From IMG/VR virus record IMGVR_UViG_3300035665_000001, positions 1 through 64,000 of that record: a stretch of 64,000 bases of DNA; one strand, given 5' to 3'. Positions 1-51,846 of this stretch are shown in pieces. The notes below the pieces were generated by a model, which had not been told where the DNA came from, did no database searches, and saw only the letters and a list, made by a program, of their open reading frames with translations. Position 1 is the first letter of the stretch. Every line of letters begins with the position of its first letter. The position numbers and the translations under genes were made by a program.

Positions 1-136
1 TGTCCTTGTTGTCCTTGTTGTCCTTGTTGTCCTTGTTGTCCTTGTTGTCCTTGTTGTCCTTGTTGTCCTTGTTGTCCTTGTTGTCCTTGTTGTCCTTGTT
101 GTCCTTGTTGTCCTTGTTGTCCTTGTTGTCCTTGTT
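1..136. repeat. Perfect 9-bp tandem repeat (TGTCCTTGT) x15, encoding (GQQ)n on the minus strand
   Basis: Directly visible and continues to the window edge; in frame with the 1106 ORF (GGA CAA CAA). Confidence 0.97.
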
Positions 137-1106
137 TTGGTGGTTCAGCACCTTCACCTGGTTTAGGCATATCATCGCCCATTCCGTCCATCTGATCAGT
201 AACATCTTTTCTATCAGCTGGCGAAAGTTTATTCAATTCTTCAACAACAGCATCATACATATCCATGTAAGTGTTGTATCTGTCATAATTGATATAATCA
301 TTAAACAACCCCATAGGTAATTGAGCATACCCACTTTTAACCAATGTATAGTTGGTAATAAAATCACCAGTATAATTGACTGCATTGCCATCAAGATTAA
401 ATGCTTTCATTAAATAGAAATCACCATTCGCATAATGCATAATTTCATGCAACAATACAAATTCACAATACAAATAGGCATCTGGAATATCACCACCCTG
501 TGATTGATATTTCTTACCATGTTTGAATTTTGGATTAGCTTTTATACCTTTTACAGTAGCAAATTTCATCAAGCTTTCCATAAAAGGTACATAAAATAAC
601 AGATGTGCGTCTGGTGTACAGGCAGCAGTTTTTATACTATCGTATTGTGGTAAAAGTTTATCGGGAGTAAACCATAAAATAGGTTCAATTCTTTTAACCT
701 GAAATGAATTCGACAAAGGATAGAATTCTGGAACTTCATACTTAACAGCGTTGAATACTTTTTGAAAAATTCTTCGATCAAACTTAACATCCGACATAGG
801 TACATCTTTAATAAAATCAAATGCCGTATCTTCATACAAATTATGTATTATGGTTGCGTTTAATAAAGGTGATTTACTAGCAAATTCTAATTTTTCAGCA
901 ACTTTACTTTCCAACATTTCCTGAGCATTAGCTTTGCTAATGCTTTTTGCTTTTGCAAACTCCTCAATAATATGTTGGATATAATCCTCTTTACCAGTAG
1001 TTACAGTAAATTTTGTTTCACCAACAGCATTATATGTATTCGTTAAACCGGCCTCAGTTAAGTATGTTTTAAACATTGAATCGATGTTCTCAAAAAAATC
1101 ATTCAT
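1..1106 (-). CDS. Zincin-like (HExxH) metallopeptidase-domain protein, DUF2201/VWA-partner type, with GQQ repeat; 3' end runs off the window
   Basis: Not in the ORF track because there is no stop in the window. Read by hand from ATG 1106: MNDFFENIDSMFKTYLTEAG...TAACTPDAHLLFYVPF...CEFVLLHEIMHYANGD...VNYTGDFITNYTL...PPKQ(GQQ)n. Lies 3 nt downstream of a MoxR-type AAA gene. Confidence 0.8.
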   Translation of the reverse strand, partial: MNDFFENIDSMFKTYLTEAGLTNTYNAVGETKFTVTTGKEDYIQHIIEEFAKAKSISKANAQEMLESKVAEKLEFASKSPLLNATIIHNLYEDTAFDFIKDVPMSDVKFDRRIFQKVFNAVKYEVPEFYPLSNSFQVKRIEPILWFTPDKLLPQYDSIKTAACTPDAHLLFYVPFMESLMKFATVKGIKANPKFKHGKKYQSQGGDIPDAYLYCEFVLLHEIMHYANGDFYLMKAFNLDGNAVNYTGDFITNYTLVKSGYAQLPMGLFNDYINYDRYNTYMDMYDAVVEELNKLSPADRKDVTDQMDGMGDDMPKPGEGAEPPKQGQQGQQGQQGQQGQQGQQGQQGQQGQQGQQGQQGQQGQQGQQG

Positions 1107-1109
1107 AAC

Positions 1110-3140
1110 TTATCCTCGTTTTAATCCAAATTTAACTAAAATTTCTCTGATTTTTGTAGCAGTAGTATCAAGTTCCTCTGTTATTTTTGCATCCATATAA
1201 TCTTCAAGCAAAATAAGCATCAAATTTTGACTAAGTGCTAATTCATCACATGTGGCTTTTAATGATATATACAAATTACTTAAATATTGATTTGTTCGTT
1301 CTGCTTCCTTAACTTTTCCAGCATATGCAGCTTTATCAGTTAGAATATTCAAAATAACATGAATATATTTCAAGTATTTAACATATAATTCACATGTTTT
1401 AGCCTCTAGCATAGGTACATCATTAACTTCACCCGCAGCATTAACAAATTTTGCAGTTCCACTACTTTTTTGATTTTCTACAATTTTATCAGCAACAAAA
1501 TCCGTAATTTCTTGAACAAATTTTTGTGGTGATGTTAAATTTGCAGTTAAATAATTATCAAAATGTGGTGAATCATATAATTGTTCAGGATCATCATAAT
1601 AAGCGTTAAATATTTCACTAATAGTTTTAACCCCTTCTACTTTGCGTGTTTTAATTCCTTCATACATAACTTTTACAGAATCATTATTACGAATAAATCC
1701 ACCCGTAACATCTAAAAAATTATCAGGCGGTACCTGTTGTTTTTTACATGTAAACGTCAATTTATTACTCCAGGCATCATGAAATTCATTAACCATTGCA
1801 TCAATAAATATATCAAAATCTTCATCAGAGTAACTGGTATCCAAATTAAATTTACCAACTTTTCTTTCATCTGAATTATTCAACGCATTAGTTTCCCAAT
1901 CATCATCATCTTCAATTGATTCCTGTGTTGAAGAAAGTGTCGATTCTAAACCAACAACCGTAAGTCTATTAATGATATTAACATTTGTCATACTTACAAT
2001 ATCAGTTATCTCTCTAGGTGACAGGTATACCACGGTTCTTTCATTTCTTAAATTGAATAATTTTTCTTCTTTCTGAATATCATTTCCACGCCAATCAACA
2101 GTTGTAGATTGATAATGGCTTAATACGGTTTTAATAGCACCTACTGTAGCAGTATTACAATCAAACCCCATTTTCAATTCAAGATCTTTTGGTCTTTCAT
2201 TAGATAGCAAATAGGTTTCTAATGATGCCCAAGATGCTCTCGCAGGAATAATATCAACAACATCGCGAGTATGACTTGTTAATTCACCAACACCAGCATC
2301 ATCAGGATTTAATGCACCAGCAACCATGATTTCCACAGGTAAATCAAATTCTTCATTAAAAGATTTTTCCAATAATAATTTTCTAATTGAATTGAATACC
2401 TGAGCATCAGCTCTAGTTAATTCATCTAATAATAATAAAAATTTATATTTTCCTTGACCTTTTTTTCTTTTTTCTTCTGGAATGACTTCCTCATTTTTAA
2501 GTGTTTCCTGCATTTTTTTCTGAATTAAATCAAGTAATTCAGGTTTAGAAAACGATGTAGTCATTACGGGTAAACCATTACTATCTAATTCAGGAGAATT
2601 ATTTGCATCTTTTGCTTGGTTTGCCGTTGGAATTCCAGTAGTTGATTCACGATGTAATGTTGATACATCAATGTGTATAAAATGTAAATCTAAATTATTG
2701 GCAACTTGCATCATATGTGCAGTATTGTGATGAATAAATCCTTGAGCATCCTGATACAAATGTGTATCCGTAGCAATATTTAAATCATATACTAATTCCT
2801 GTGCACCCGTTAATGTTGATTTTGTAATCTTAACAATTGAACCATCTGCCTTCTCTACAGAATCCCCAATATTAAATTCATTTACAAATTTACAATCCTT
2901 TTTATTATAAGCCAATTTATGTTTTTCAGCAGTTTCAACTTTAGTGCCATCATCAAATTCAATAACGTTAATAACATCTTCCTTTGTCATTAGAAAAGGA
3001 ACAGGTTGATAGTGTCCATTTTCATCCTTTAGTTTAATTGCTGATTTCACATAATATTCTTCATCACAGACAAATTCAACACCTTCTAATCTGGCTACAG
3101 CTTCAAATAATTCTGAAATTTCTACTTTTAATTCCATCAT
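1110..3140 (-). CDS. C-terminal half of split tandem AAA+ (MoxR/AAA_5-like) ATPase: C-intein (aa 1-139) plus C-extein
   Basis: First 139 aa end in VYDLNIATDTHLYQDAQGFIHHN|T (intein blocks F/G). Then Walker B LLLLDELTRAD, sensor VAGALNP and LSPRE. Lacks its own Walker A GK. Confidence 0.9.
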   Translation of the reverse strand: MMELKVEISELFEAVARLEGVEFVCDEEYYVKSAIKLKDENGHYQPVPFLMTKEDVINVIEFDDGTKVETAEKHKLAYNKKDCKFVNEFNIGDSVEKADGSIVKITKSTLTGAQELVYDLNIATDTHLYQDAQGFIHHNTAHMMQVANNLDLHFIHIDVSTLHRESTTGIPTANQAKDANNSPELDSNGLPVMTTSFSKPELLDLIQKKMQETLKNEEVIPEEKRKKGQGKYKFLLLLDELTRADAQVFNSIRKLLLEKSFNEEFDLPVEIMVAGALNPDDAGVGELTSHTRDVVDIIPARASWASLETYLLSNERPKDLELKMGFDCNTATVGAIKTVLSHYQSTTVDWRGNDIQKEEKLFNLRNERTVVYLSPREITDIVSMTNVNIINRLTVVGLESTLSSTQESIEDDDDWETNALNNSDERKVGKFNLDTSYSDEDFDIFIDAMVNEFHDAWSNKLTFTCKKQQVPPDNFLDVTGGFIRNNDSVKVMYEGIKTRKVEGVKTISEIFNAYYDDPEQLYDSPHFDNYLTANLTSPQKFVQEITDFVADKIVENQKSSGTAKFVNAAGEVNDVPMLEAKTCELYVKYLKYIHVILNILTDKAAYAGKVKEAERTNQYLSNLYISLKATCDELALSQNLMLILLEDYMDAKITEELDTTATKIREILVKFGLKRG
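2724..3140 (-). mobile_element. Split intein, C-fragment (139 aa)
   Basis: IEFDDGTKVETAEKHKL (block B-like His), VYDL (block F) and terminal His-Asn followed by Thr(+1) at 2721-2723. Confidence 0.9.
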
Positions 3141-3173
3141 CTTTTCACCTTTTAATATTTAATATTTAATATT

Positions 3174-3181
3174 TATTTATA
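3174..3181 (-). promoter_or_regulatory. T4-type late promoter TATAAATA upstream of the C-intein gene
   Basis: Exact TATAAATA on the minus strand about 35 nt upstream of the start; the genome encodes a gp55-like sigma. Confidence 0.7.
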
Positions 3182-3320
3182 GTATTTTTCCATATTTATT
3201 ATCTATTTTTAAAACCTCAGATATGGAAATTGTAAATATACCAATTTTTCATTTGTTATCCCAACATTAAAGCATTTTCAAAGAAAAGTTTCACACAAAT
3301 CTACTACGAATATAGGTTAC

Positions 3321-3353
3321 AAAAAAAATCCCCAGTTTTTCAACCAGGGATTT
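3321..3353 (-). terminator. Rho-independent terminator between the two halves of the split AAA gene
   Basis: AAAUCCCUGGUU-GAAA-AACUGGGGAUUU followed by a U-run on the minus strand. Confidence 0.75.
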
Positions 3354-3412
3354 AAATTTTTGAATAGTGTTGACTTAACTAAACACTCTCACATTGTTGA
3401 TAAAAACACATA

Positions 3413-5032
3413 CTATTTTAATTTTTCAGCTCTAATTTCTAAAATAGTTTTATATAACACCTCATCGATCTCAACTATAATTTCCTGATTACCTCGTAAA
3501 CATTTACCAATACCAGGTTCTCCAGAGATAATGGGTACATATTTTCTAGCCTCTTTAGCCGTTGATTCGGAATCACCATCCATTTTAATTTTAGTAAGTA
3601 ATTGCTGTTCTAATACATCTCGCCATTCGGTTTGTGGATGTGTACTACCATCAAAATCAATTTTAGATGTTTGTTTTATCAAATCAACCATAATTTTTTT
3701 AATTTTTGGATATAAATCTGATACAGCTCCATTTGTGTAATTTTTAAAATTCAATTCCACATTTGTCATCAATATTGATGCTTCTCTAAAATTTGCAACT
3801 GGTAAATTTGCGTTGATATATAACAGTAATTGTTCCCACCGTCTAGGTGAAGATCTAACCTCAACAGATTTATCATCATAACTTAAATCTTCAGCAGTTA
3901 AATTATCATAGAATGTATTAAACACTTGTGGGTTTAATTTGATACTTGGAAATTCCTTCGATATATTTTTTTCATATTTTTTAAGGAAATAATCAAACCA
4001 TTGTTCTTTATCAGGGGATTTAAATTCCATTTCTACGAAATCATTATTCATAGGAATATCTTCAACACCATCGTCACTCAAATTTGATGCATAAACAATG
4101 AAAACTCCAGGTGGAATTTTATCATTACCAATTTGTCCATTCAAAATATTTCTAAGGATGTTTCTGATTTTCATATTATCATTTCTAAAATATTCATCTA
4201 AAAACAATATACAGTTATATGATTCCCTAACATTTGTGATCAAAGCTTTATTGTTTGTATAACCATCTCTAATTGTTCTATCTTTTTTAAGATTAGTAAT
4301 CAGTTCTTCCGTAGTCAATTTTAAAGATTTCATCGATTTTAATTTGGTGACCAAATTTGATTCCGATTGTACGATTTCAAATTTTTGTGAGGTCAAATCA
4401 TTTAAACCACTACTATCTTGTGATGTAGTAACGACTGCAGAATCAGAGGAAATTTTATCACCAACCATAATCATAAATGGAATATTGATAATGTGTTCCT
4501 CAGTAATATGTGGTGCCTCAATAGTTATTAATGGTAAACCTAATAATTTTGAGAACCCACGAATAAAAGAAGTTTTACCCGTTCCTGGATCACCAGTAAG
4601 CATAATAGAATTTTTTACACCCGATGAAGCTGCCTGTCCGTCCATTAACGACAATAATGTAAAAATTTGTTTATTGAACACGTTGTTATTATTTACATTT
4701 GGAGCTTTAAACATCAGTTCCTTAGAACTTAATGCTTTATCAAGTGAACCACCAGCTTTCACCGAACCACCAGATTCATCGGGAATATATTTTTCAACAA
4801 CACTACCATCCAAATTTAAAAATTTTGCAGATTTTGCCGCCTCTACATATTTTTTCAAAGATGCAGTTTTTGTATCTAAATCTTTTTCAAAATCACCAAT
4901 ATTTTCATCTGTAATTTTTTTATCTTTGTGGTTTAACACAGCATTAATCAGAGCATCAAATGTTACATTTGTTCTAGATGTAATCTTATCGGAAAGTTTT
5001 GCTTCCGTAATTAACGAATATGATAATTTCAT
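3413..5032 (-). CDS. N-terminal half of split tandem AAA+ ATPase: complete AAA module 1, Walker A of module 2, and N-intein
   Basis: GDPGTGKTS, LFLDEYFR and RSSPRRWE, then a second P-loop ISGEPGIGK followed directly by CLRGNQEI... and a stop 29 aa later. Confidence 0.9.
   Translation of the reverse strand: MKLSYSLITEAKLSDKITSRTNVTFDALINAVLNHKDKKITDENIGDFEKDLDTKTASLKKYVEAAKSAKFLNLDGSVVEKYIPDESGGSVKAGGSLDKALSSKELMFKAPNVNNNNVFNKQIFTLLSLMDGQAASSGVKNSIMLTGDPGTGKTSFIRGFSKLLGLPLITIEAPHITEEHIINIPFMIMVGDKISSDSAVVTTSQDSSGLNDLTSQKFEIVQSESNLVTKLKSMKSLKLTTEELITNLKKDRTIRDGYTNNKALITNVRESYNCILFLDEYFRNDNMKIRNILRNILNGQIGNDKIPPGVFIVYASNLSDDGVEDIPMNNDFVEMEFKSPDKEQWFDYFLKKYEKNISKEFPSIKLNPQVFNTFYDNLTAEDLSYDDKSVEVRSSPRRWEQLLLYINANLPVANFREASILMTNVELNFKNYTNGAVSDLYPKIKKIMVDLIKQTSKIDFDGSTHPQTEWRDVLEQQLLTKIKMDGDSESTAKEARKYVPIISGEPGIGKCLRGNQEIIVEIDEVLYKTILEIRAEKLK
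3416..3502 (-). mobile_element. Split intein, N-fragment (29 aa)
   Basis: CLRGNQEIIV matches intein block A (C1-L-x-G-x-x-x-I) and sits at the GK|T insertion point of a P-loop. Confidence 0.85.
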
Positions 5033-5035
5033 TCT

Positions 5036-5428
5036 CTACTCCCAATTCATAATTTTTTTAAATTCATCTGGTGTATCTACCAGAGTTTTCATCATTTCAG
5101 CATATCTATAAATATATCCAGTTTCAAGATAATTAACACATGGAATAACATATCTTTTTCCCGTATCTGGATCAACGATACCGCCATACATTCCAATGAT
5201 TATTTGAGTTCTGTCTTTACCTGTTGTATCTATTGTAGCCACAGATGCTCGTACTTTTGCTAAATTTTCTTCAGAAATATCAAATTTTGTATCGGTATTA
5301 CTTTGGTTACTAGTTGCAACTCCATAAGATGTTGCAACATCTTCAAAAATCTTATTTGATATTTTATAAGAAGATTTAGTTTGAATTTTAGTGGAAGTTT
5401 GTTTTAACATATCAGCCAACTTACTCAT
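5036..5428 (-). CDS. Hypothetical protein, first gene of the AAA/peptidase late operon
   Basis: ORF with AGGAG SD and TATAAATA at 5470-5477; 3 nt from the AAA gene. Confidence 0.75.
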   Translation of the reverse strand: MSKLADMLKQTSTKIQTKSSYKISNKIFEDVATSYGVATSNQSNTDTKFDISEENLAKVRASVATIDTTGKDRTQIIIGMYGGIVDPDTGKRYVIPCVNYLETGYIYRYAEMMKTLVDTPDEFKKIMNWE

Positions 5429-5521
5429 TTTAACTCCTTCAATATATTATTTTTAATTATAATTTTCTATATTTATATCTTTTTTTTAAAAAAGCCATCA
5501 CTTATATCACATTAATTATTC

Positions 5522-22952: not shown

Positions 22953-23645
22953 CTAGCAAATATAACCATCCATTTTTTCTCTTTTTCTTCTAATCGATTC
23001 AAAATCGGTGTCAATATCAGTTCTATTATCTAATGCTATTTCAATTGCTTGATCTTTTATTTCTCGATTTTTCTTTTCTTTTTTTAGAATTTGCCTGAAA
23101 GCATTTGTTATGATTTGAGTGAGATAGGAGAATGATGACGATTTTTGTCCGAGTTCATTTGTTTTGGTTATATCAAATTTAGTTATACCTTTGATAGATT
23201 GATAAATTGCTTCTGCTTTCATATCATCTAAATAAGTATAATGTCTAAATTTTGTTTGTGTTGCAACTCGATCAACAGTTAAAACTACAATTTCTCCCAA
23301 TCTACGAGTACAGTATGTTTTTAATGTTGCTGCAGCAATTGATTTTTCCTTCTCAAGATGCATAGAGTTTTTTTCGGGTAAGGTGCTTAATTTAAGTATT
23401 TTCTCATCCCATTCATTTGCCAATTTTTCTAAAAAATTAAATTTATTATTCTGAGCTAATTCAATCTCATATCGCAATTCACTTTCTTTTACATAATGTT
23501 CAGATTGTGGTCGCCCTTTCTTTTTTGGTGATTCATCAACCAAATAATTGGGTTCATCCTCAATTTGAGGATCAATTTCATTATCAAATTGAGAATCTAA
23601 TAGTGATCCATAATCTAATAGGTTTGTGTTGTGTTCGTTATCCAT
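22953..23645 (-). CDS. Late transcription sigma factor (T4 gp55-like)
   Basis: HYVKE...FRHYTYLDDMKAEA...KFD...FSYLTQIITNAFRQILKKEKK matches the gp55 pattern. Confidence 0.88.
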   Translation of the reverse strand: MDNEHNTNLLDYGSLLDSQFDNEIDPQIEDEPNYLVDESPKKKGRPQSEHYVKESELRYEIELAQNNKFNFLEKLANEWDEKILKLSTLPEKNSMHLEKEKSIAAATLKTYCTRRLGEIVVLTVDRVATQTKFRHYTYLDDMKAEAIYQSIKGITKFDITKTNELGQKSSSFSYLTQIITNAFRQILKKEKKNREIKDQAIEIALDNRTDIDTDFESIRRKREKMDGYIC

Positions 23646-50714: not shown

Positions 50715-50779
50715 TCTTTTTATCCTATTAGTGTTTTAACTATATTATACTATACGAATACGCTAATAGGATAAAAAGA
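50715..50779 (+). promoter_or_regulatory. Hairpin sequestering the RBS and start of the endonuclease gene
   Basis: 17-bp perfect inverted repeat TCTTTTTATCCTATTAG / CTAATAGGATAAAAAGA covering AGGA and the A of ATG. Confidence 0.75.
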
Positions 50780-51846
50780 TGAATGAGATTAAAAACCCAA
50801 CTCAATTACTAGCATCATTTCCACAATTGGGTTTCAATTTGGATAATTATGATATTGTTGCAAAATACGCAGGCTTTTTGGAATATGTGTTAGATGAAGA
50901 AATATTATTAAATATAGATAATGTACGATTACATGTTAGGGAATTTTTTAAAGAAGAATATGGTGTAACCTTTCCAAGGGTAAGTAAAAATTCATCAAAA
51001 TTTTGGATTGCTAGAGGCTTTTCTGAAGAAGAAGCGAAAATAAGAACTAAAGAATTTTATGATACTAAGATAAAAAATAACCGTGTATTGCCAACTCAAC
51101 TGCAATACTATCTGAATAAAGGTATGTCAGAAGAAGATGCTAAACAGGCTCTTAAAGATGAGCAAACCAAGCGTGTAAAAAAATTAACGGATAAAGAAAT
51201 AGCTAACCCAATGCTGAGAAAGCAACGTTTGTGGAATAATATCGAATATTGGTTGAATAAAGGTTTCACTGAGATTCAAGGGATGCAACTTATTGAAGAA
51301 AAGTTTAAATCTAGAAATCTTCAAACGATGGTTAAATTAACTAAAAAATTCCAAGATAAAGGCTTGAATTATGATGATGCACTAGAAAGTGCTCAAAAAG
51401 ATTATAAAAAGAGAGCAAAGAAAACTATGGATACTAGAATAGAAAATAATTCTTTTGGGTTTCAAAAAGCGTCAAAACAATCCTTGAAAGTTTTTCAACC
51501 GTTGATGGATAAGTTAGATGATGAAAGCATCGAGTATTTTGTGGGTGTTGAAGGCAACACAGAATACTTCTTAGCCTCCGGAACAGAATATTTCTACTCC
51601 TATGATTTTTGTGTTCCATCTAAAAAATTAATAATAGAATATCATGGTGAACACACCCACCCTAATCCTAATATGGATCCAGAAAGTTGGAAAAATTGGA
51701 AACATTGCTGGACTAAAAAATCAGCCAATGAGTGTAGAGCGAAGGATTTGAAAAAGATTAGATTAGCAGAGAACAAAGGATATAAGGTAATTGAAATTTT
51801 TGAAAGTGATAATTATGATTTATTGTCTTATCTTTTAGAAAACTAA
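50779..51846 (+). CDS. Putative free-standing homing endonuclease (PD-(D/E)XK/Vsr-like) with repeated (F/Y)W..(K/R)G.(S/T)EEEA motifs
   Basis: SYDFCVPSKKLIIEYHGEHTHPNP...DLKKIRLAENKGYKVIEIFESD; three N-terminal repeats. Confidence 0.75.
   Translation: MNEIKNPTQLLASFPQLGFNLDNYDIVAKYAGFLEYVLDEEILLNIDNVRLHVREFFKEEYGVTFPRVSKNSSKFWIARGFSEEEAKIRTKEFYDTKIKNNRVLPTQLQYYLNKGMSEEDAKQALKDEQTKRVKKLTDKEIANPMLRKQRLWNNIEYWLNKGFTEIQGMQLIEEKFKSRNLQTMVKLTKKFQDKGLNYDDALESAQKDYKKRAKKTMDTRIENNSFGFQKASKQSLKVFQPLMDKLDDESIEYFVGVEGNTEYFLASGTEYFYSYDFCVPSKKLIIEYHGEHTHPNPNMDPESWKNWKHCWTKKSANECRAKDLKKIRLAENKGYKVIEIFESDNYDLLSYLLEN

What the first reader, a model, noticed from the sequence alone, without database searches (positions are those of the whole stretch)
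3141..3412. Spacer between the intein halves holds a terminator and a new late promoter instead of a homing endonuclease
Seen: a GAAA-capped terminator (3321-3353), then TATAAATA (3174-3181), a TTAATAT x3 tract and an AGGTG SD before the C-half. Known: phage split-intein genes often have a free-standing endonuclease between the halves. Inference: here the endonuclease is absent and the split has been domesticated. The halves can be expressed independently, so the unspliced single-AAA form and the spliced double-AAA form could be separately tunable.
Basis: partly seen in the sequence, partly recalled or inferred. Interest (0 to 1): 0.6.

Follow-up and report, generated by a model that had tools for sequence, protein, structure and literature searches.

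The report
Split-intein spacer with endonuclease fossil
The 272-base gap separates the two halves of a jumbo-phage ATPase gene that is rejoined at the protein level by a split intein; it does carry a terminator and a late promoter, and its terminator half is the decayed tail of a homing-endonuclease gene that once sat there on the opposite strand.

Summary
On the minus strand, 3141-3412 holds an intrinsic terminator (3353-3321), TATAAATA (3181-3174), an (ATATTAA)x3 leader (3172-3152) and an AGGTG ribosome-binding site (3150-3146).

The flanking genes are two pieces of a MoxR-like tandem AAA+ ATPase, cut exactly at the second Walker A (GEPGIGK|T). The intein is atypically split: a 29-residue N fragment and a 139-residue C fragment.

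The promoter call is sound. ATAAATA is strongly enriched 25-40 nt before start codons genome-wide, it precedes tail-sheath genes, and the window encodes a gp55-like late sigma factor. Terminator, promoter and ribosome-binding site recur in the spacers of related phages.

- The endonuclease is not simply absent. The spacer from the stop codon to the terminator matches the 3' end of an antisense DUF559/Vsr-like endonuclease gene. That gene is intact between the intein halves of a neighbouring Clp gene in a related phage, and the terminator hairpin lies inside its coding sequence.
- "Domestication" and "separately tunable forms" are not supported. Both halves use the same late promoter type. The element is scattered over the host-protein tree, and it also occupies the first P-loop in one relative.

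This is stage III of the published "fractured gene" model, in a new variant.

The parts
5470..5477 (-). Late promoter (TATAAATA) of the upstream transcription unit, which holds the 130-aa gene and the N piece
   Evidence: It lies 42 nt before the ATG at 5428, with a GAAGGAG ribosome-binding site. ATAAATA sits at the same place in L003, L006 and L007.
5036..5428 (-). 130-aa gene of unknown function, immediately followed by the N piece (stop and next ATG 3 nt apart)
   Evidence: Syntenic genes of 128-132 aa occur in relatives. No Pfam or PHROG match.
3503..5032 (-). N-extein: the first AAA+ domain (Walker A GDPGTGKT) plus the start of the second, ending in GEPGIGK
   Evidence: Pfam AAA E = 3.9e-8. 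57% identical to residues 9-547 of the unsplit homologue P0005.
3413..3502 (-). N-terminal intein fragment of 29 aa, starting with Cys, plus the stop codon
   Evidence: Absent from unsplit homologues. Conserved in L003, L006, L007 and L009. Predicted to dock on the C fragment: ipSAE 0.89 against a best control of 0.01.
3296..3412 (+). Decayed 3' end of an antisense DUF559/Vsr-like homing-endonuclease gene (no longer coding)
   Evidence: blastn to the intact gene's 3' end in L017: 70% over 69 nt, colinear, E = 7e-6. Alignment A6. The orthologous spacers of L009 and L006 still read as the endonuclease C-terminus: Pfam DUF559 E = 1.4e-4 and 0.017; tblastn with P0278 E = 3e-14 and 4e-12.
3321..3353 (-). 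Intrinsic terminator: 12-bp stem, GAAA loop, T8 run
   Evidence: dG -14.3 kcal/mol. A homologous hairpin with a T-run occurs in L006, L009 and L017. Non-homologous hairpins sit at the same place in L003, in the second L006 spacer and in L010.
3174..3181 (-). T4-type late promoter (TATAAATA) of the C piece
   Evidence: It lies 33 nt before the ATG. Every relative has ATAAATA within 15-60 nt of the ATG; the distances are 27-34 nt in all but the L006 AAA2 spacer, where the nearest copy is 49 nt away. Genome-wide enrichment. A gp55-like sigma factor is encoded in the window.
3152..3172 (-). (ATATTAA)x3 tract, which forms most of the predicted AT-rich 5' leader
   Evidence: unique, 0.18 expected. 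It is unpaired in the predicted fold. Not conserved in relatives.
3146..3150 (-). Ribosome-binding site AGGTG
   Evidence: GGAG or AAGGA occupies the same place in relatives.
2724..3140 (-). C-terminal intein fragment of 139 aa, ending in HHN
   Evidence: Absent from unsplit homologues. Invariant block-B His and the motif THLYQD.QGFIHHN. The family profile finds 341 clusters. A contiguous family member folds as an intein.
1110..2723 (-). C-extein: from the Thr that completes Walker A to the end of the ATPase
   Evidence: 62% identical to residues 548-1096 of P0005.
3..1106 (-). Downstream gene with a DUF2201_N metallopeptidase-like domain (the usual partner of MoxR ATPases). It sits 3 nt after the C piece and is cut off by the end of the record.
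   Evidence: Pfam DUF2201_N E = 3.2e-6. Syntenic in relatives.
22953..23645 (-). gp55-like late sigma factor, the likely reader of the TATAAATA promoters
   Evidence: T4 gp55 match E = 5.6e-6. phrog_234 'late sigma transcription factor' E = 5e-19.
50779..51846 (+). Intact free-standing paralogue of the endonuclease whose relic lies in the spacer
   Evidence: Match to P0278 E = 9.2e-32. Same C-terminal motifs.

Best explanation
Positions 3141-3412 are the intergenic spacer of a "fractured" late gene in a roughly 306-kb freshwater jumbo phage.

Anatomy (shown):
- The gene encodes a MoxR-like tandem AAA+ ATPase, cut at the Walker A lysine of the second AAA domain.
- The intein is split atypically, after its first helix. 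The N fragment is 29 aa and the C fragment 139 aa, with Cys at position 1 and Thr at +1.
- The N piece follows a 130-aa gene that has a T4-type late promoter in front of it (5477-5470).
- The terminator at 3353-3321 follows the N piece.
- The C piece and the DUF2201_N gene behind it have their own late promoter (3181-3174), a short unstructured AT-rich leader and an AGGTG ribosome-binding site.

How it most likely works (inferred): both transcription units are switched on late by the phage's gp55-like sigma factor. The first stops at the terminator. The two polypeptides then dock through the intein fragments and splice in trans. This joins Lys510 to Thr140, restores GEPGIGKT and gives a 1047-aa ATPase.

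Origin (shown by homology): the stop-to-terminator part of the spacer is the fossil 3' end of a DUF559/Vsr-like homing-endonuclease gene that once lay between the halves on the opposite strand. In the intact version, the terminator hairpin lies inside the endonuclease coding sequence.

History (inferred): the endonuclease cassette broke the intein and supplied the termination signal. The endonuclease later decayed by deletion. The hairpin, a promoter and a ribosome-binding site were kept because both pieces must still be expressed.
For: Exact extein junction against unsplit homologues.

The two intein fragments are conserved in four relatives; the C fragment alone is seen in two more. Catalytic Cys1, the block-B His and HN|T are invariant.

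Predicted complex of the N and C fragments: ipSAE 0.89 in three runs against a best control of 0.01. That mark was reached by 58 of 80 solved complexes and 2 of 110 mismatched pairs. The runs agree in at least 84% of contacts and the partner's pLDDT is at least 69. The contacts include the block B, F and G regions.

A contiguous family member folds with pLDDT 92. All top PDB matches are inteins: RadA E = 4.7e-7; VidaL, TM-score 0.81 by the target's length.

Late promoter: positional and strand-specific enrichment, presence before the tail-sheath and sheath-stabiliser genes, and the gp55-like sigma factor.

An ATAAATA and a ribosome-binding site recur in every relative's spacer, and a terminator-like hairpin in all but the 64-bp spacer of L007, although spacer lengths range from 64 to 414 bp.

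Endonuclease relic: Pfam DUF559 at 22.1 bits, above the curated cut-off, for the antisense reading of L009. An intact 398-aa antisense ORF lies between the intein halves in L017 and has the same C-terminus. DNA and protein homology E-values run from 7e-6 to 1e-21.

The hairpin survives in the window, with changes on both arms beside the loop that keep the pairing, although the antisense reading frame is destroyed.

RNA contigs identical to the N piece run to 3369, 16 nt short of the stem, and none covers the C piece.
Against: - No transcript ends were mapped. The only RNA data are assembled contigs at 2-5x depth from one sample. They show neither ends nor levels, and an RNA library can contain DNA.
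- Splicing activity is inferred, not measured.
- Standard intein profiles do not reach significance on the window's fragments: Pfam E = 0.068, NCBIfam no match, PDB by sequence E = 0.46.
- The C fragment alone folds poorly, pLDDT 57.
- In the window itself the relic is visible only at the DNA level (69 nt, E = 7e-6). Its antisense translation matches no family.
- The intact endonuclease was found in a different gene (Clp) of a different phage, not in an AAA-AAA allele.
- Endonuclease assignment rests on weak profile matches: DUF559 at 17-22 bits, and I-Bth0305I as the top PDB hit at only E = 0.2.
Confidence: 0.75

Rival explanations
1. The split has been domesticated as a regulatory device: the two halves are expressed independently, so the phage can tune the ratio of an unspliced single-AAA form to the spliced double-AAA form.
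For: The halves have separate promoters and a terminator between them. Metatranscriptome contigs cover the N piece only. In one relative (P0033) the C piece is no longer next to the N piece.
Against: Both units use the same late promoter type, so they are co-timed. Most close homologues do without the split: 23 unsplit against 7 split. The split alleles are scattered over the tree. Intein divergence is uncoupled from extein divergence, and a second copy sits at the other P-loop. These are features of a selfish element. The N piece ends in the middle of a P-loop, so it is not a finished single-AAA protein.
Confidence: 0.1
2. The signals are incidental features of AT-rich DNA. The halves are co-transcribed by read-through, and the hairpin matters only as a leftover of the endonuclease gene.
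For: The spacer is 24% G+C, and the window-wide count of TATAAATA equals chance. Apart from the hairpin, the spacer folds no better than shuffled sequence (z = -1.26). The hairpin was originally coding sequence.
Against: ATAAATA sits 27-34 nt before the ATG in all but one of the relatives' spacers, 49 nt in the L006 AAA2 spacer, although the sequences cannot be aligned there. The genome-wide enrichment is oriented. The window keeps the hairpin and T-run after losing the antisense reading frame. Relatives with non-homologous spacers have other hairpins at the same place.
Confidence: 0.1
3. The locus is a decaying pseudogene. The ATPase was broken by a mobile element, the intein no longer splices, and the two ORFs are remnants.
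For: Splicing was not tested. The endonuclease has decayed. Intein profiles match weakly.
Against: Both ORFs are full length. They are conserved at 57-65% identity with every Walker motif. The intein's catalytic residues are invariant in the aligned fragments: eight C fragments of this intein group (seven at the AAA2 site and the L006 copy at AAA1) plus L016's, and five N fragments. The expression signals are conserved. Docking of the fragments is predicted with high confidence.
Confidence: 0.05

Closest known systems
"Fractured genes" of marine phages (Dassa et al. 2009, PMC2677866), especially locus gp41-7 and stage III of their gene-breaking model
   Same: A phage enzyme gene is broken within an intein into two genes that keep their locus and orientation. 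A free-standing Vsr-like endonuclease is implicated. TATAAATA late-promoter elements and hairpins are present. After the endonuclease is lost, a leftover control element remains.
   Different: In that paper all three ORFs lie on one strand and the break falls at the canonical site between motifs N4 and C2. Here the break follows the first helix (29-aa N fragment). The intact endonuclease in the relative is antisense and converges on the N piece. The retained leftover is the endonuclease's own 3' coding end, which carries the terminator. The host protein is a MoxR-like tandem AAA+ ATPase and not a DNA-metabolism enzyme.
Naturally atypical split inteins: AceL-TerL and GOS-TerL (split after helix alpha1, site S2), VidaL and PolB16 (site S1) (PMC13014065, PMC11766414)
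   Same: The N fragment is short: 29 aa, inside the reported range of 15-37. The split follows the first helix, as in the TerL inteins. The source is a phage from a lake metagenome. VidaL gives the highest TM-score by the target's length in the fold search (0.81); it ranks fifth by E-value.
   Different: The host protein and insertion site differ (P-loop GK|T of an AAA+ domain). The catalytic pair is Cys1/Thr+1. The C fragment is larger (139 aa against 104-115). No significant sequence match to any solved intein. Relatedness to the published sequences could not be tested, because they were not available as references.
I-Bth0305I and the Vsr-like/DUF559 homing endonucleases (PDB 3R3P; PMC3239194)
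   Same: The intact relative P0278 and the relics match the C-terminal part of DUF559. I-Bth0305I is the top PDB sequence hit. This endonuclease family is known from fractured genes.
   Different: The matches are weak (17-22 bits; PDB E = 0.2). P0278 has a long N-terminal region of repeats. No activity or target site is known.
T4 late transcription (gp55-dependent TATAAATA promoters) and the fractured nrdA of Aeromonas phage Aeh1 with mobE
   Same: The TATAAATA core lies about 30-40 nt before start codons. A gp55-like sigma factor is encoded. Late promoters stand at the junction of a fractured gene.
   Different: The first T of the motif is not required in this genome; the core is ATAAATA. No hairpin that hides the ribosome-binding site, as described for mobE, is predicted here. 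Homologues of gp33 and gp45 were not looked for.

Membership tests
Intein (HINT domain, class 1) | In-frame insertion that is absent from orthologues, with exact flanks | tested here: met
   N-piece residues 1-510 and C-piece residues 140-676 abut at residues 547/548 of unsplit P0005.
Intein (HINT domain, class 1) | Catalytic residues: Cys or Ser at position 1, block-B His, C-terminal His-Asn, and a nucleophile at +1 | tested here: met
   Cys511, His74, His138-Asn139 and Thr140 are all invariant in relatives.
Intein (HINT domain, class 1) | HINT fold | tested here: met
   Shown for a contiguous family member, P0211, which the profile links to the window's C fragment at E = 1.2e-17. Its model has pLDDT 92 and all top PDB matches are inteins. 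The window's own C fragment folds poorly alone, pLDDT 57.
Intein (HINT domain, class 1) | Match to curated intein sequence models | tested here: not met
   Pfam Intein_splicing E = 0.068. NCBIfam: no match. PDB by sequence: DnaE intein at E = 0.46. The family is divergent in sequence.
Intein (HINT domain, class 1) | Protein splicing activity | not testable with these tools
   Only docking was predicted: ipSAE 0.89 against a best control of 0.01.
Atypically split intein, site S2 (AceL-TerL type) | N fragment of 15-37 aa ending after helix alpha1; large C fragment | tested here: met
   The N fragment is 29 aa and the C fragment 139 aa. When aligned to contiguous members, the break falls in the variable loop (model residues 27-35) that follows helix 17-26. 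The criteria are taken from PMC13014065.
Fractured gene (Dassa 2009) | Two gene parts kept in the original locus and orientation, with a split intein at the break | tested here: met
Fractured gene (Dassa 2009) | Free-standing homing-endonuclease gene between the parts | tested here: not met
   There is no ORF in the window's spacer, only a relic. This equals their exceptional locus gp41-7, stage III of their model.
Fractured gene (Dassa 2009) | All ORFs on one strand; break between intein motifs N4 and C2 | tested here: not met
   The intact endonuclease in L017 is on the opposite strand. The break follows the first helix.
T4-type late promoter | TATAAATA core at a fixed short distance upstream of late genes | tested here: met
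   It precedes the tail-sheath and sheath-stabiliser genes.
T4-type late promoter | gp55-like sigma factor encoded by the phage | tested here: met
   window:22953-23645(-). T4 gp55 match E = 5.6e-6; phrog_234 E = 5e-19.
T4-type late promoter | Mapped transcription start and late timing | not testable with these tools
   No raw-read RNA data and no cultured phage. Only contigs were available.
Intrinsic terminator | Stable hairpin followed by a U-tract on the transcribed strand | tested here: met
   12 pairs, dG -14.3 kcal/mol, T8. The hairpin is conserved in L006, L009 and L017.
Intrinsic terminator | RNA 3' ends at the U-tract | tested here: inconclusive
   An RNA contig ends at 3369, and no RNA contig covers 3141-3368 or the C piece. 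Contigs cannot show ends.
DUF559/Vsr-like homing endonuclease (relic) | Sequence homology to family members | tested here: met
   L009 antisense peptide: DUF559 22.1 bits, E = 1.4e-4, above the cut-off. P0278 residues 255-398: 21.0 bits. The window matches at the DNA level only, E = 7e-6.
DUF559/Vsr-like homing endonuclease (relic) | Site-specific cleavage of the intein-less allele | not testable with these tools

The most novel reading that the evidence does not exclude
A very large, mostly unnoticed family of atypically split inteins spreads among the P-loops of many phage ATPases. It travels as a cassette whose antisense endonuclease gene carries, inside its own coding sequence, the terminator that the upstream gene fragment needs.

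On this reading the invader makes the gene break viable in one step. After the endonuclease decays, selection keeps the terminator and leaves fixed split genes. Some of these are three-piece genes with two paralogous inteins, which must either be orthogonal to each other or allow alternative joining.
Probability: 0.35. Interest if true: 0.7.

Novelty: new variant of a known kind. Interest (0 to 1): 0.55.

Why it matters
How a gene survives being broken in two has been an open point since the split DnaE intein was found. The break must at once create a terminator, a promoter and stable products (stated in PMC2677866).

This locus and its relatives show successive stages of that process in one phage group:
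- unsplit, intein-free alleles;
- a break with an intact antisense endonuclease whose coding sequence contains the terminator;
- endonuclease relics of about 270, 130 and 70 nt;
- a 64-bp spacer with no visible relic;
- a C piece that is no longer next to its N piece.

It also adds a naturally atypical split intein with a 29-aa N fragment and a Cys1/Thr+1 pair. The family behind it has hundreds of sequence clusters. This kind of intein is sought as a protein-ligation tool and has been called rare.

Tried and rejected
- Curated intein models (Pfam, NCBIfam) and a PDB sequence-profile search did not reach significance on the window's fragments.
- AlphaFold2 on the C fragment alone gave pLDDT 57, so it was not used for a fold search.
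- Pattern scans with the single proteins found no close relatives in viral contigs. One scan of metagenome contigs with the alignment confirmed none of its 93 pattern matches.
- Nucleotide search of the phage collection found nothing. The protein search found only one distant jumbo-phage homologue, Ralstonia phage RsoM2USA gp86.
- Rfam: no family in or around the spacer; the best match was NsiR1 at E = 0.22.
- A hairpin that hides the ribosome-binding site, as at Aeh1 mobE, is not predicted. The ribosome-binding site and ATG are unpaired, and the whole-spacer fold has z = -1.26.
- A PHROG "HNH endonuclease" match of the gene downstream of the C piece was rejected. Pfam shows a DUF2201_N metallopeptidase-like domain and a collagen-like (GQQ)n repeat.
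- No contiguous or endonuclease-bearing allele of this intein was found at the second P-loop among close homologues. P0106 has a LAGLIDADG intein, but at the first P-loop and unrelated in sequence.
- The spacers of L003, L007 and L010 and the second L006 spacer show no recognisable endonuclease relic.
- The idea that the tail of the N fragment duplicates the head of the C fragment was dropped. Contiguous family members have both segments in series.
- The DNA around P0033 could not be fetched.
- The careful tree search did not finish in time, so the quick IQ-TREE tree was used.
- One script printed far more weak blastn rows than needed. Only its top colinear hits are used.
Full report
**Setting**

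The window is the first 64 kb of a 306,333-bp IMG/VR virus record, about 30% G+C and estimated 85% complete. Near-identical DNA occurs in many lake and freshwater metagenomes. The genes around the finding lie on the minus strand.

Three ORFs run in series:
- 5036-5428: a 130-aa gene.
- 3413-5032: a 539-aa ORF, protein P0001, called the N piece here.
- 1110-3140: a 676-aa ORF, protein P0002, called the C piece here.

A gene cut off by the record's start follows at 3-1106. The finding, 3141-3412, is the gap between the N and C pieces.

**Checking the observation**

| Element | Coordinates (minus strand) | Basis |
|---|---|---|
| Terminator stem, 12 pairs (2 are G-U) | 3353-3342 with 3337-3326 | |
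| GAAA loop | 3341-3338 | |
| T8 run (first three T's close the stem) | 3328-3321 | |
| TATAAATA | 3181-3174, 33 nt before the ATG | |
| (ATATTAA)x3 | 3172-3152 | |
| AGGTG | 3150-3146 | |
| ATG | 3140 | |

The hairpin has dG -14.3 kcal/mol. The repeat tract is unique in the window, against 0.18 expected. No ORF of endonuclease size exists in the spacer.

**The flanking genes are halves of a split-intein gene**

- P0001 has one complete AAA domain and ends in GEPGIGK followed by 29 residues that start with Cys.
- P0002 starts with 139 residues that end in HHN, followed by Thr.
- Against an unsplit 1099-aa homologue (P0005), P0001 residues 1-510 align up to residue 547. P0002 aligns from residue 140 onward, starting at residue 548. 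The insert is therefore exact, and removing it restores GEPGIGKT.
- Six other C pieces start at the same residue. Four N pieces end with the same kind of fragment.
- Cys1, a block-B His and HN|T are invariant.

Curated intein profiles miss the fragments, so fold evidence was sought in other ways.
- The predicted complex of the two fragments scores ipSAE 0.89 in three runs, against a best control of 0.01. That mark was reached by 58 of 80 solved complexes and 2 of 110 mismatched pairs. The runs agree in at least 84% of contacts, and the partner's pLDDT is at least 69. My own alignments were used, so these counts hold only roughly.
- A profile of the C fragment finds 341 clusters in 1.84 billion representative proteins. 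About four in five of the best 150 carry the fragment at their very N-terminus, which means they are split. About one in five carry it internally.
- Fifteen of those internal matches were inspected for the residues before them. Fourteen show a Cys just after a P-loop, eleven after G.GK and three after AGE.
- An alignment of 14 such contiguous members folds with pLDDT 92. Every top PDB match is an intein: RadA at E = 4.7e-7, and VidaL with the highest TM-score by the target's length, 0.81.
- In that model the window's break falls in the variable loop after the first helix. This is the S2 site described for AceL-TerL and GOS-TerL.

**The promoter**

Counted over the window, TATAAATA is at chance level, but its placement is not.
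- Genome-wide, 38 of 57 TATAAATA sites are intergenic. The real core is ATAAATA: 110 of 201 sites are intergenic and 108 lie upstream of a gene on the correct strand. The sites peak 25-40 nt before the ATG.
- Of 179 genes with an upstream gap of at least 60 nt, 57 carry the motif. Shuffling gives 14.2, and the reverse complement occurs 5 times.
- Genes preceded by TATAAATA include the tail sheath and the sheath stabiliser.
- The window encodes a gp55-like late sigma factor at 22953-23645.

The motif is therefore best read as a T4-type late promoter. The N piece has no promoter of its own. It directly follows the 130-aa gene, which has TATAAATA at 5477-5470. The same layout is seen in three relatives. 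Both halves are thus late genes.

**Relatives' spacers**

The N-piece/C-piece spacers seen whole measure 64, 200, 201, 272 and 414 bp, in L007, L003, L009, the window and L006. L005 repeats L003's spacer, and L006 has a second, 247-bp spacer described below.
- Each of these spacers, and the partial upstream sequence of L010 and L011, has ATAAATA within 15-60 nt of the C piece's ATG and a ribosome-binding site. The distance is 27-34 nt in all but the 414-bp L006 spacer, where the nearest copy lies 49 nt away.
- All but the 64-bp one have a hairpin after the N piece.
- The promoter-proximal parts cannot be aligned with each other. The recurrence therefore points to function, not shared descent.

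**The unexpected part: an endonuclease fossil**

The stop-to-terminator segment is homologous in the window, L009 and L006. Read on the opposite strand, it gives the following.
- The L009 and L006 versions translate to the C-terminal end of a DUF559/Vsr-like endonuclease. Pfam gives E = 1.4e-4 (22.1 bits, above the cut-off) and E = 0.017.
- A related phage, L017, has an unsplit AAA-AAA gene. Its neighbouring Clp ATPase gene is broken by the same intein family. Between those halves, on the opposite strand, lies an intact 398-aa ORF (P0278). Its C-terminus is nearly the same as the relics.
- tblastn with P0278 gives E = 3e-14 for L009 and 4e-12 for L006.
- blastn is colinear over 133 nt for L009, 274 nt for L006 and 69 nt for the window, with E = 9e-20, 1e-21 and 7e-6 (alignment).
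- In L017 the hairpin and T-run lie inside the endonuclease coding sequence, and the gene's stop codon overlaps the end of the N fragment.
- In the window the antisense frame is destroyed, yet the hairpin is kept. Changes on both arms beside the loop preserve the pairing. This suggests that selection acts on the structure.
- P0278 matches DUF559 at 21.0 bits. Its best PDB sequence hit is the Vsr-like homing endonuclease I-Bth0305I, but weakly, at E = 0.2. Its nearest named clusters in the protein atlas are viral DUF559 families.
- The window's own genome holds at least two clear paralogues in open frames of full length (358 and 414 aa). One is at 50779-51846, just after the tail-sheath gene.

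**Is the split domesticated?**

The evidence points the other way.
- Among homologues whose C-exteins are about 43-65% identical to the window's, 23 are unsplit and intein-free and 7 are split.
- On a quick maximum-likelihood tree of the C-exteins, the split alleles need 7 changes, and well-supported branches force at least 5. The careful search did not finish. P0030 and P0032 (fragments) were left out.
- C fragments are 54-67% identical to each other in a star-like pattern that does not track extein identity (r = 0.13). The most divergent extein (P0033, 43-48% identical) has an ordinary intein (59-64% identical).
- In L006 the gene is in three pieces. A paralogous split intein sits at the first P-loop, with its own hairpin, ATAAATA and ribosome-binding site.

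This pattern fits repeated gain or loss of a mobile element.

**RNA evidence**

Two metatranscriptome runs from one sample hold contigs identical to parts of the N piece: 3369-3536, 3622-3772, 3815-4073, 4584-4762 and 4744-4894. None lies on the C piece. This fits termination and unequal levels. However, contigs at 2-5x depth cannot show ends or rank expression, so the point remains a hint only.

**Comparison with what is known**

Dassa et al. 2009 (PMC2677866) described fractured genes with same-strand endonucleases at the canonical split site. [quoted passage not shown] They also described one endonuclease-free locus (gp41-7) as stage III of their model, and uncoupling of the parts as stage IV. 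The present locus is stage III in a variant form:
- an atypical split site;
- an antisense endonuclease;
- a terminator embedded in the endonuclease's coding end and retained after decay;
- a MoxR-like AAA+ host protein.

P0033, whose C piece has no N piece next to it, may be stage IV.

- Read laying was given 4391 letters.
- No genetic code other than table 11 was used.
- The big representative search was used because the claim rested on the absence of endonuclease-bearing or contiguous relatives.

**Verdict**

It is a new variant of a known kind, of moderate interest.

Noticed in passing
L006:2201-7073 (JGI 3300020048, contig Ga0207193_1000671): The same ATPase gene is in three pieces (190, 521 and 690 aa). 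Two paralogous atypical split inteins sit at the equivalent GK|T sites of both AAA domains. The second spacer (247 bp) also has a hairpin, ATAAATA and a ribosome-binding site. The two intein pairs would have to be orthogonal to each other, or else they could join piece 1 directly to piece 3.
   Followed up: partly
Own genome outside the window: G000:C1:169358-170110(-), which is L029:1135-1887(-): A 250-aa ORF begins with an intein C fragment (ending SHN|TT) and ends with a short intein N fragment that starts with Cys after FVY. By recollection of terminase large-subunit motifs, it looks like the middle piece of a three-piece terminase gene with AceL-TerL-like split inteins; no family search was run on it.
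   Followed up: partly
window:50779-51846(+): An intact free-standing DUF559-like endonuclease paralogue (355 aa) lies directly after the tail-sheath gene. Two more copies lie near 231 kb and 249 kb of the genome.
   Followed up: partly
L017:2947-7079 (Logan contig from SRR22535648): In a syntenic relative the ClpA/B-like gene, and not the MoxR-like gene, is fractured by the same intein family. An intact 398-aa antisense endonuclease ORF lies between the halves. An ATAAATA on the endonuclease's strand lies about 48 nt before its ATG.
   Followed up: yes
L016:3077-5074 (IMGVR_UViG_3300000228_000004): A different P-loop protein (286 + 357 aa, no Pfam match) is split by a member of the same intein family. 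Its N fragment is only 13 aa (an S1-type split, as in VidaL) and its spacer is 63 bp.
   Followed up: partly
P0106 (1208 aa, a distant homologue from a 5.7-kb contig): A contiguous intein of about 354 aa with a LAGLIDADG endonuclease domain sits at the GK|T site of the first AAA domain. It is unrelated in sequence to the window's intein. Both P-loops of this protein family are intein targets.
   Followed up: partly
P0033 locus (ENA ERZ24794644, 5.5-kb contig; DNA not retrievable): The C piece has no N piece upstream. The neighbouring gene is a 265-aa ORF on the opposite strand, followed by unrelated genes. This may be genomic uncoupling of the halves, or another antisense endonuclease.
   Followed up: no
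L019:815-4065: A 368-aa same-strand ORF with a T5orf172/MUG113 (GIY-YIG-like) domain abuts the start of another C-fragment-bearing AAA gene (P0201). This may be a second kind of endonuclease associated with the intein family.
   Followed up: no
window:3-150(-): The DUF2201_N gene runs into a long (GQQ)n collagen-like repeat exactly where the record begins. The assembly probably broke in this repeat. The ClpS and ClpA/B-like genes that follow in relatives would lie beyond the record's end.
   Followed up: no
window:3157-3359: In DNA run X3 the contigs stop at 3156 and resume at 3360, leaving the spacer uncovered. An independent 2016 run (X5) has an identical contig over 3176-3395. The gap could reflect strain variation in the spacer or a break in low-complexity sequence.
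   Followed up: no
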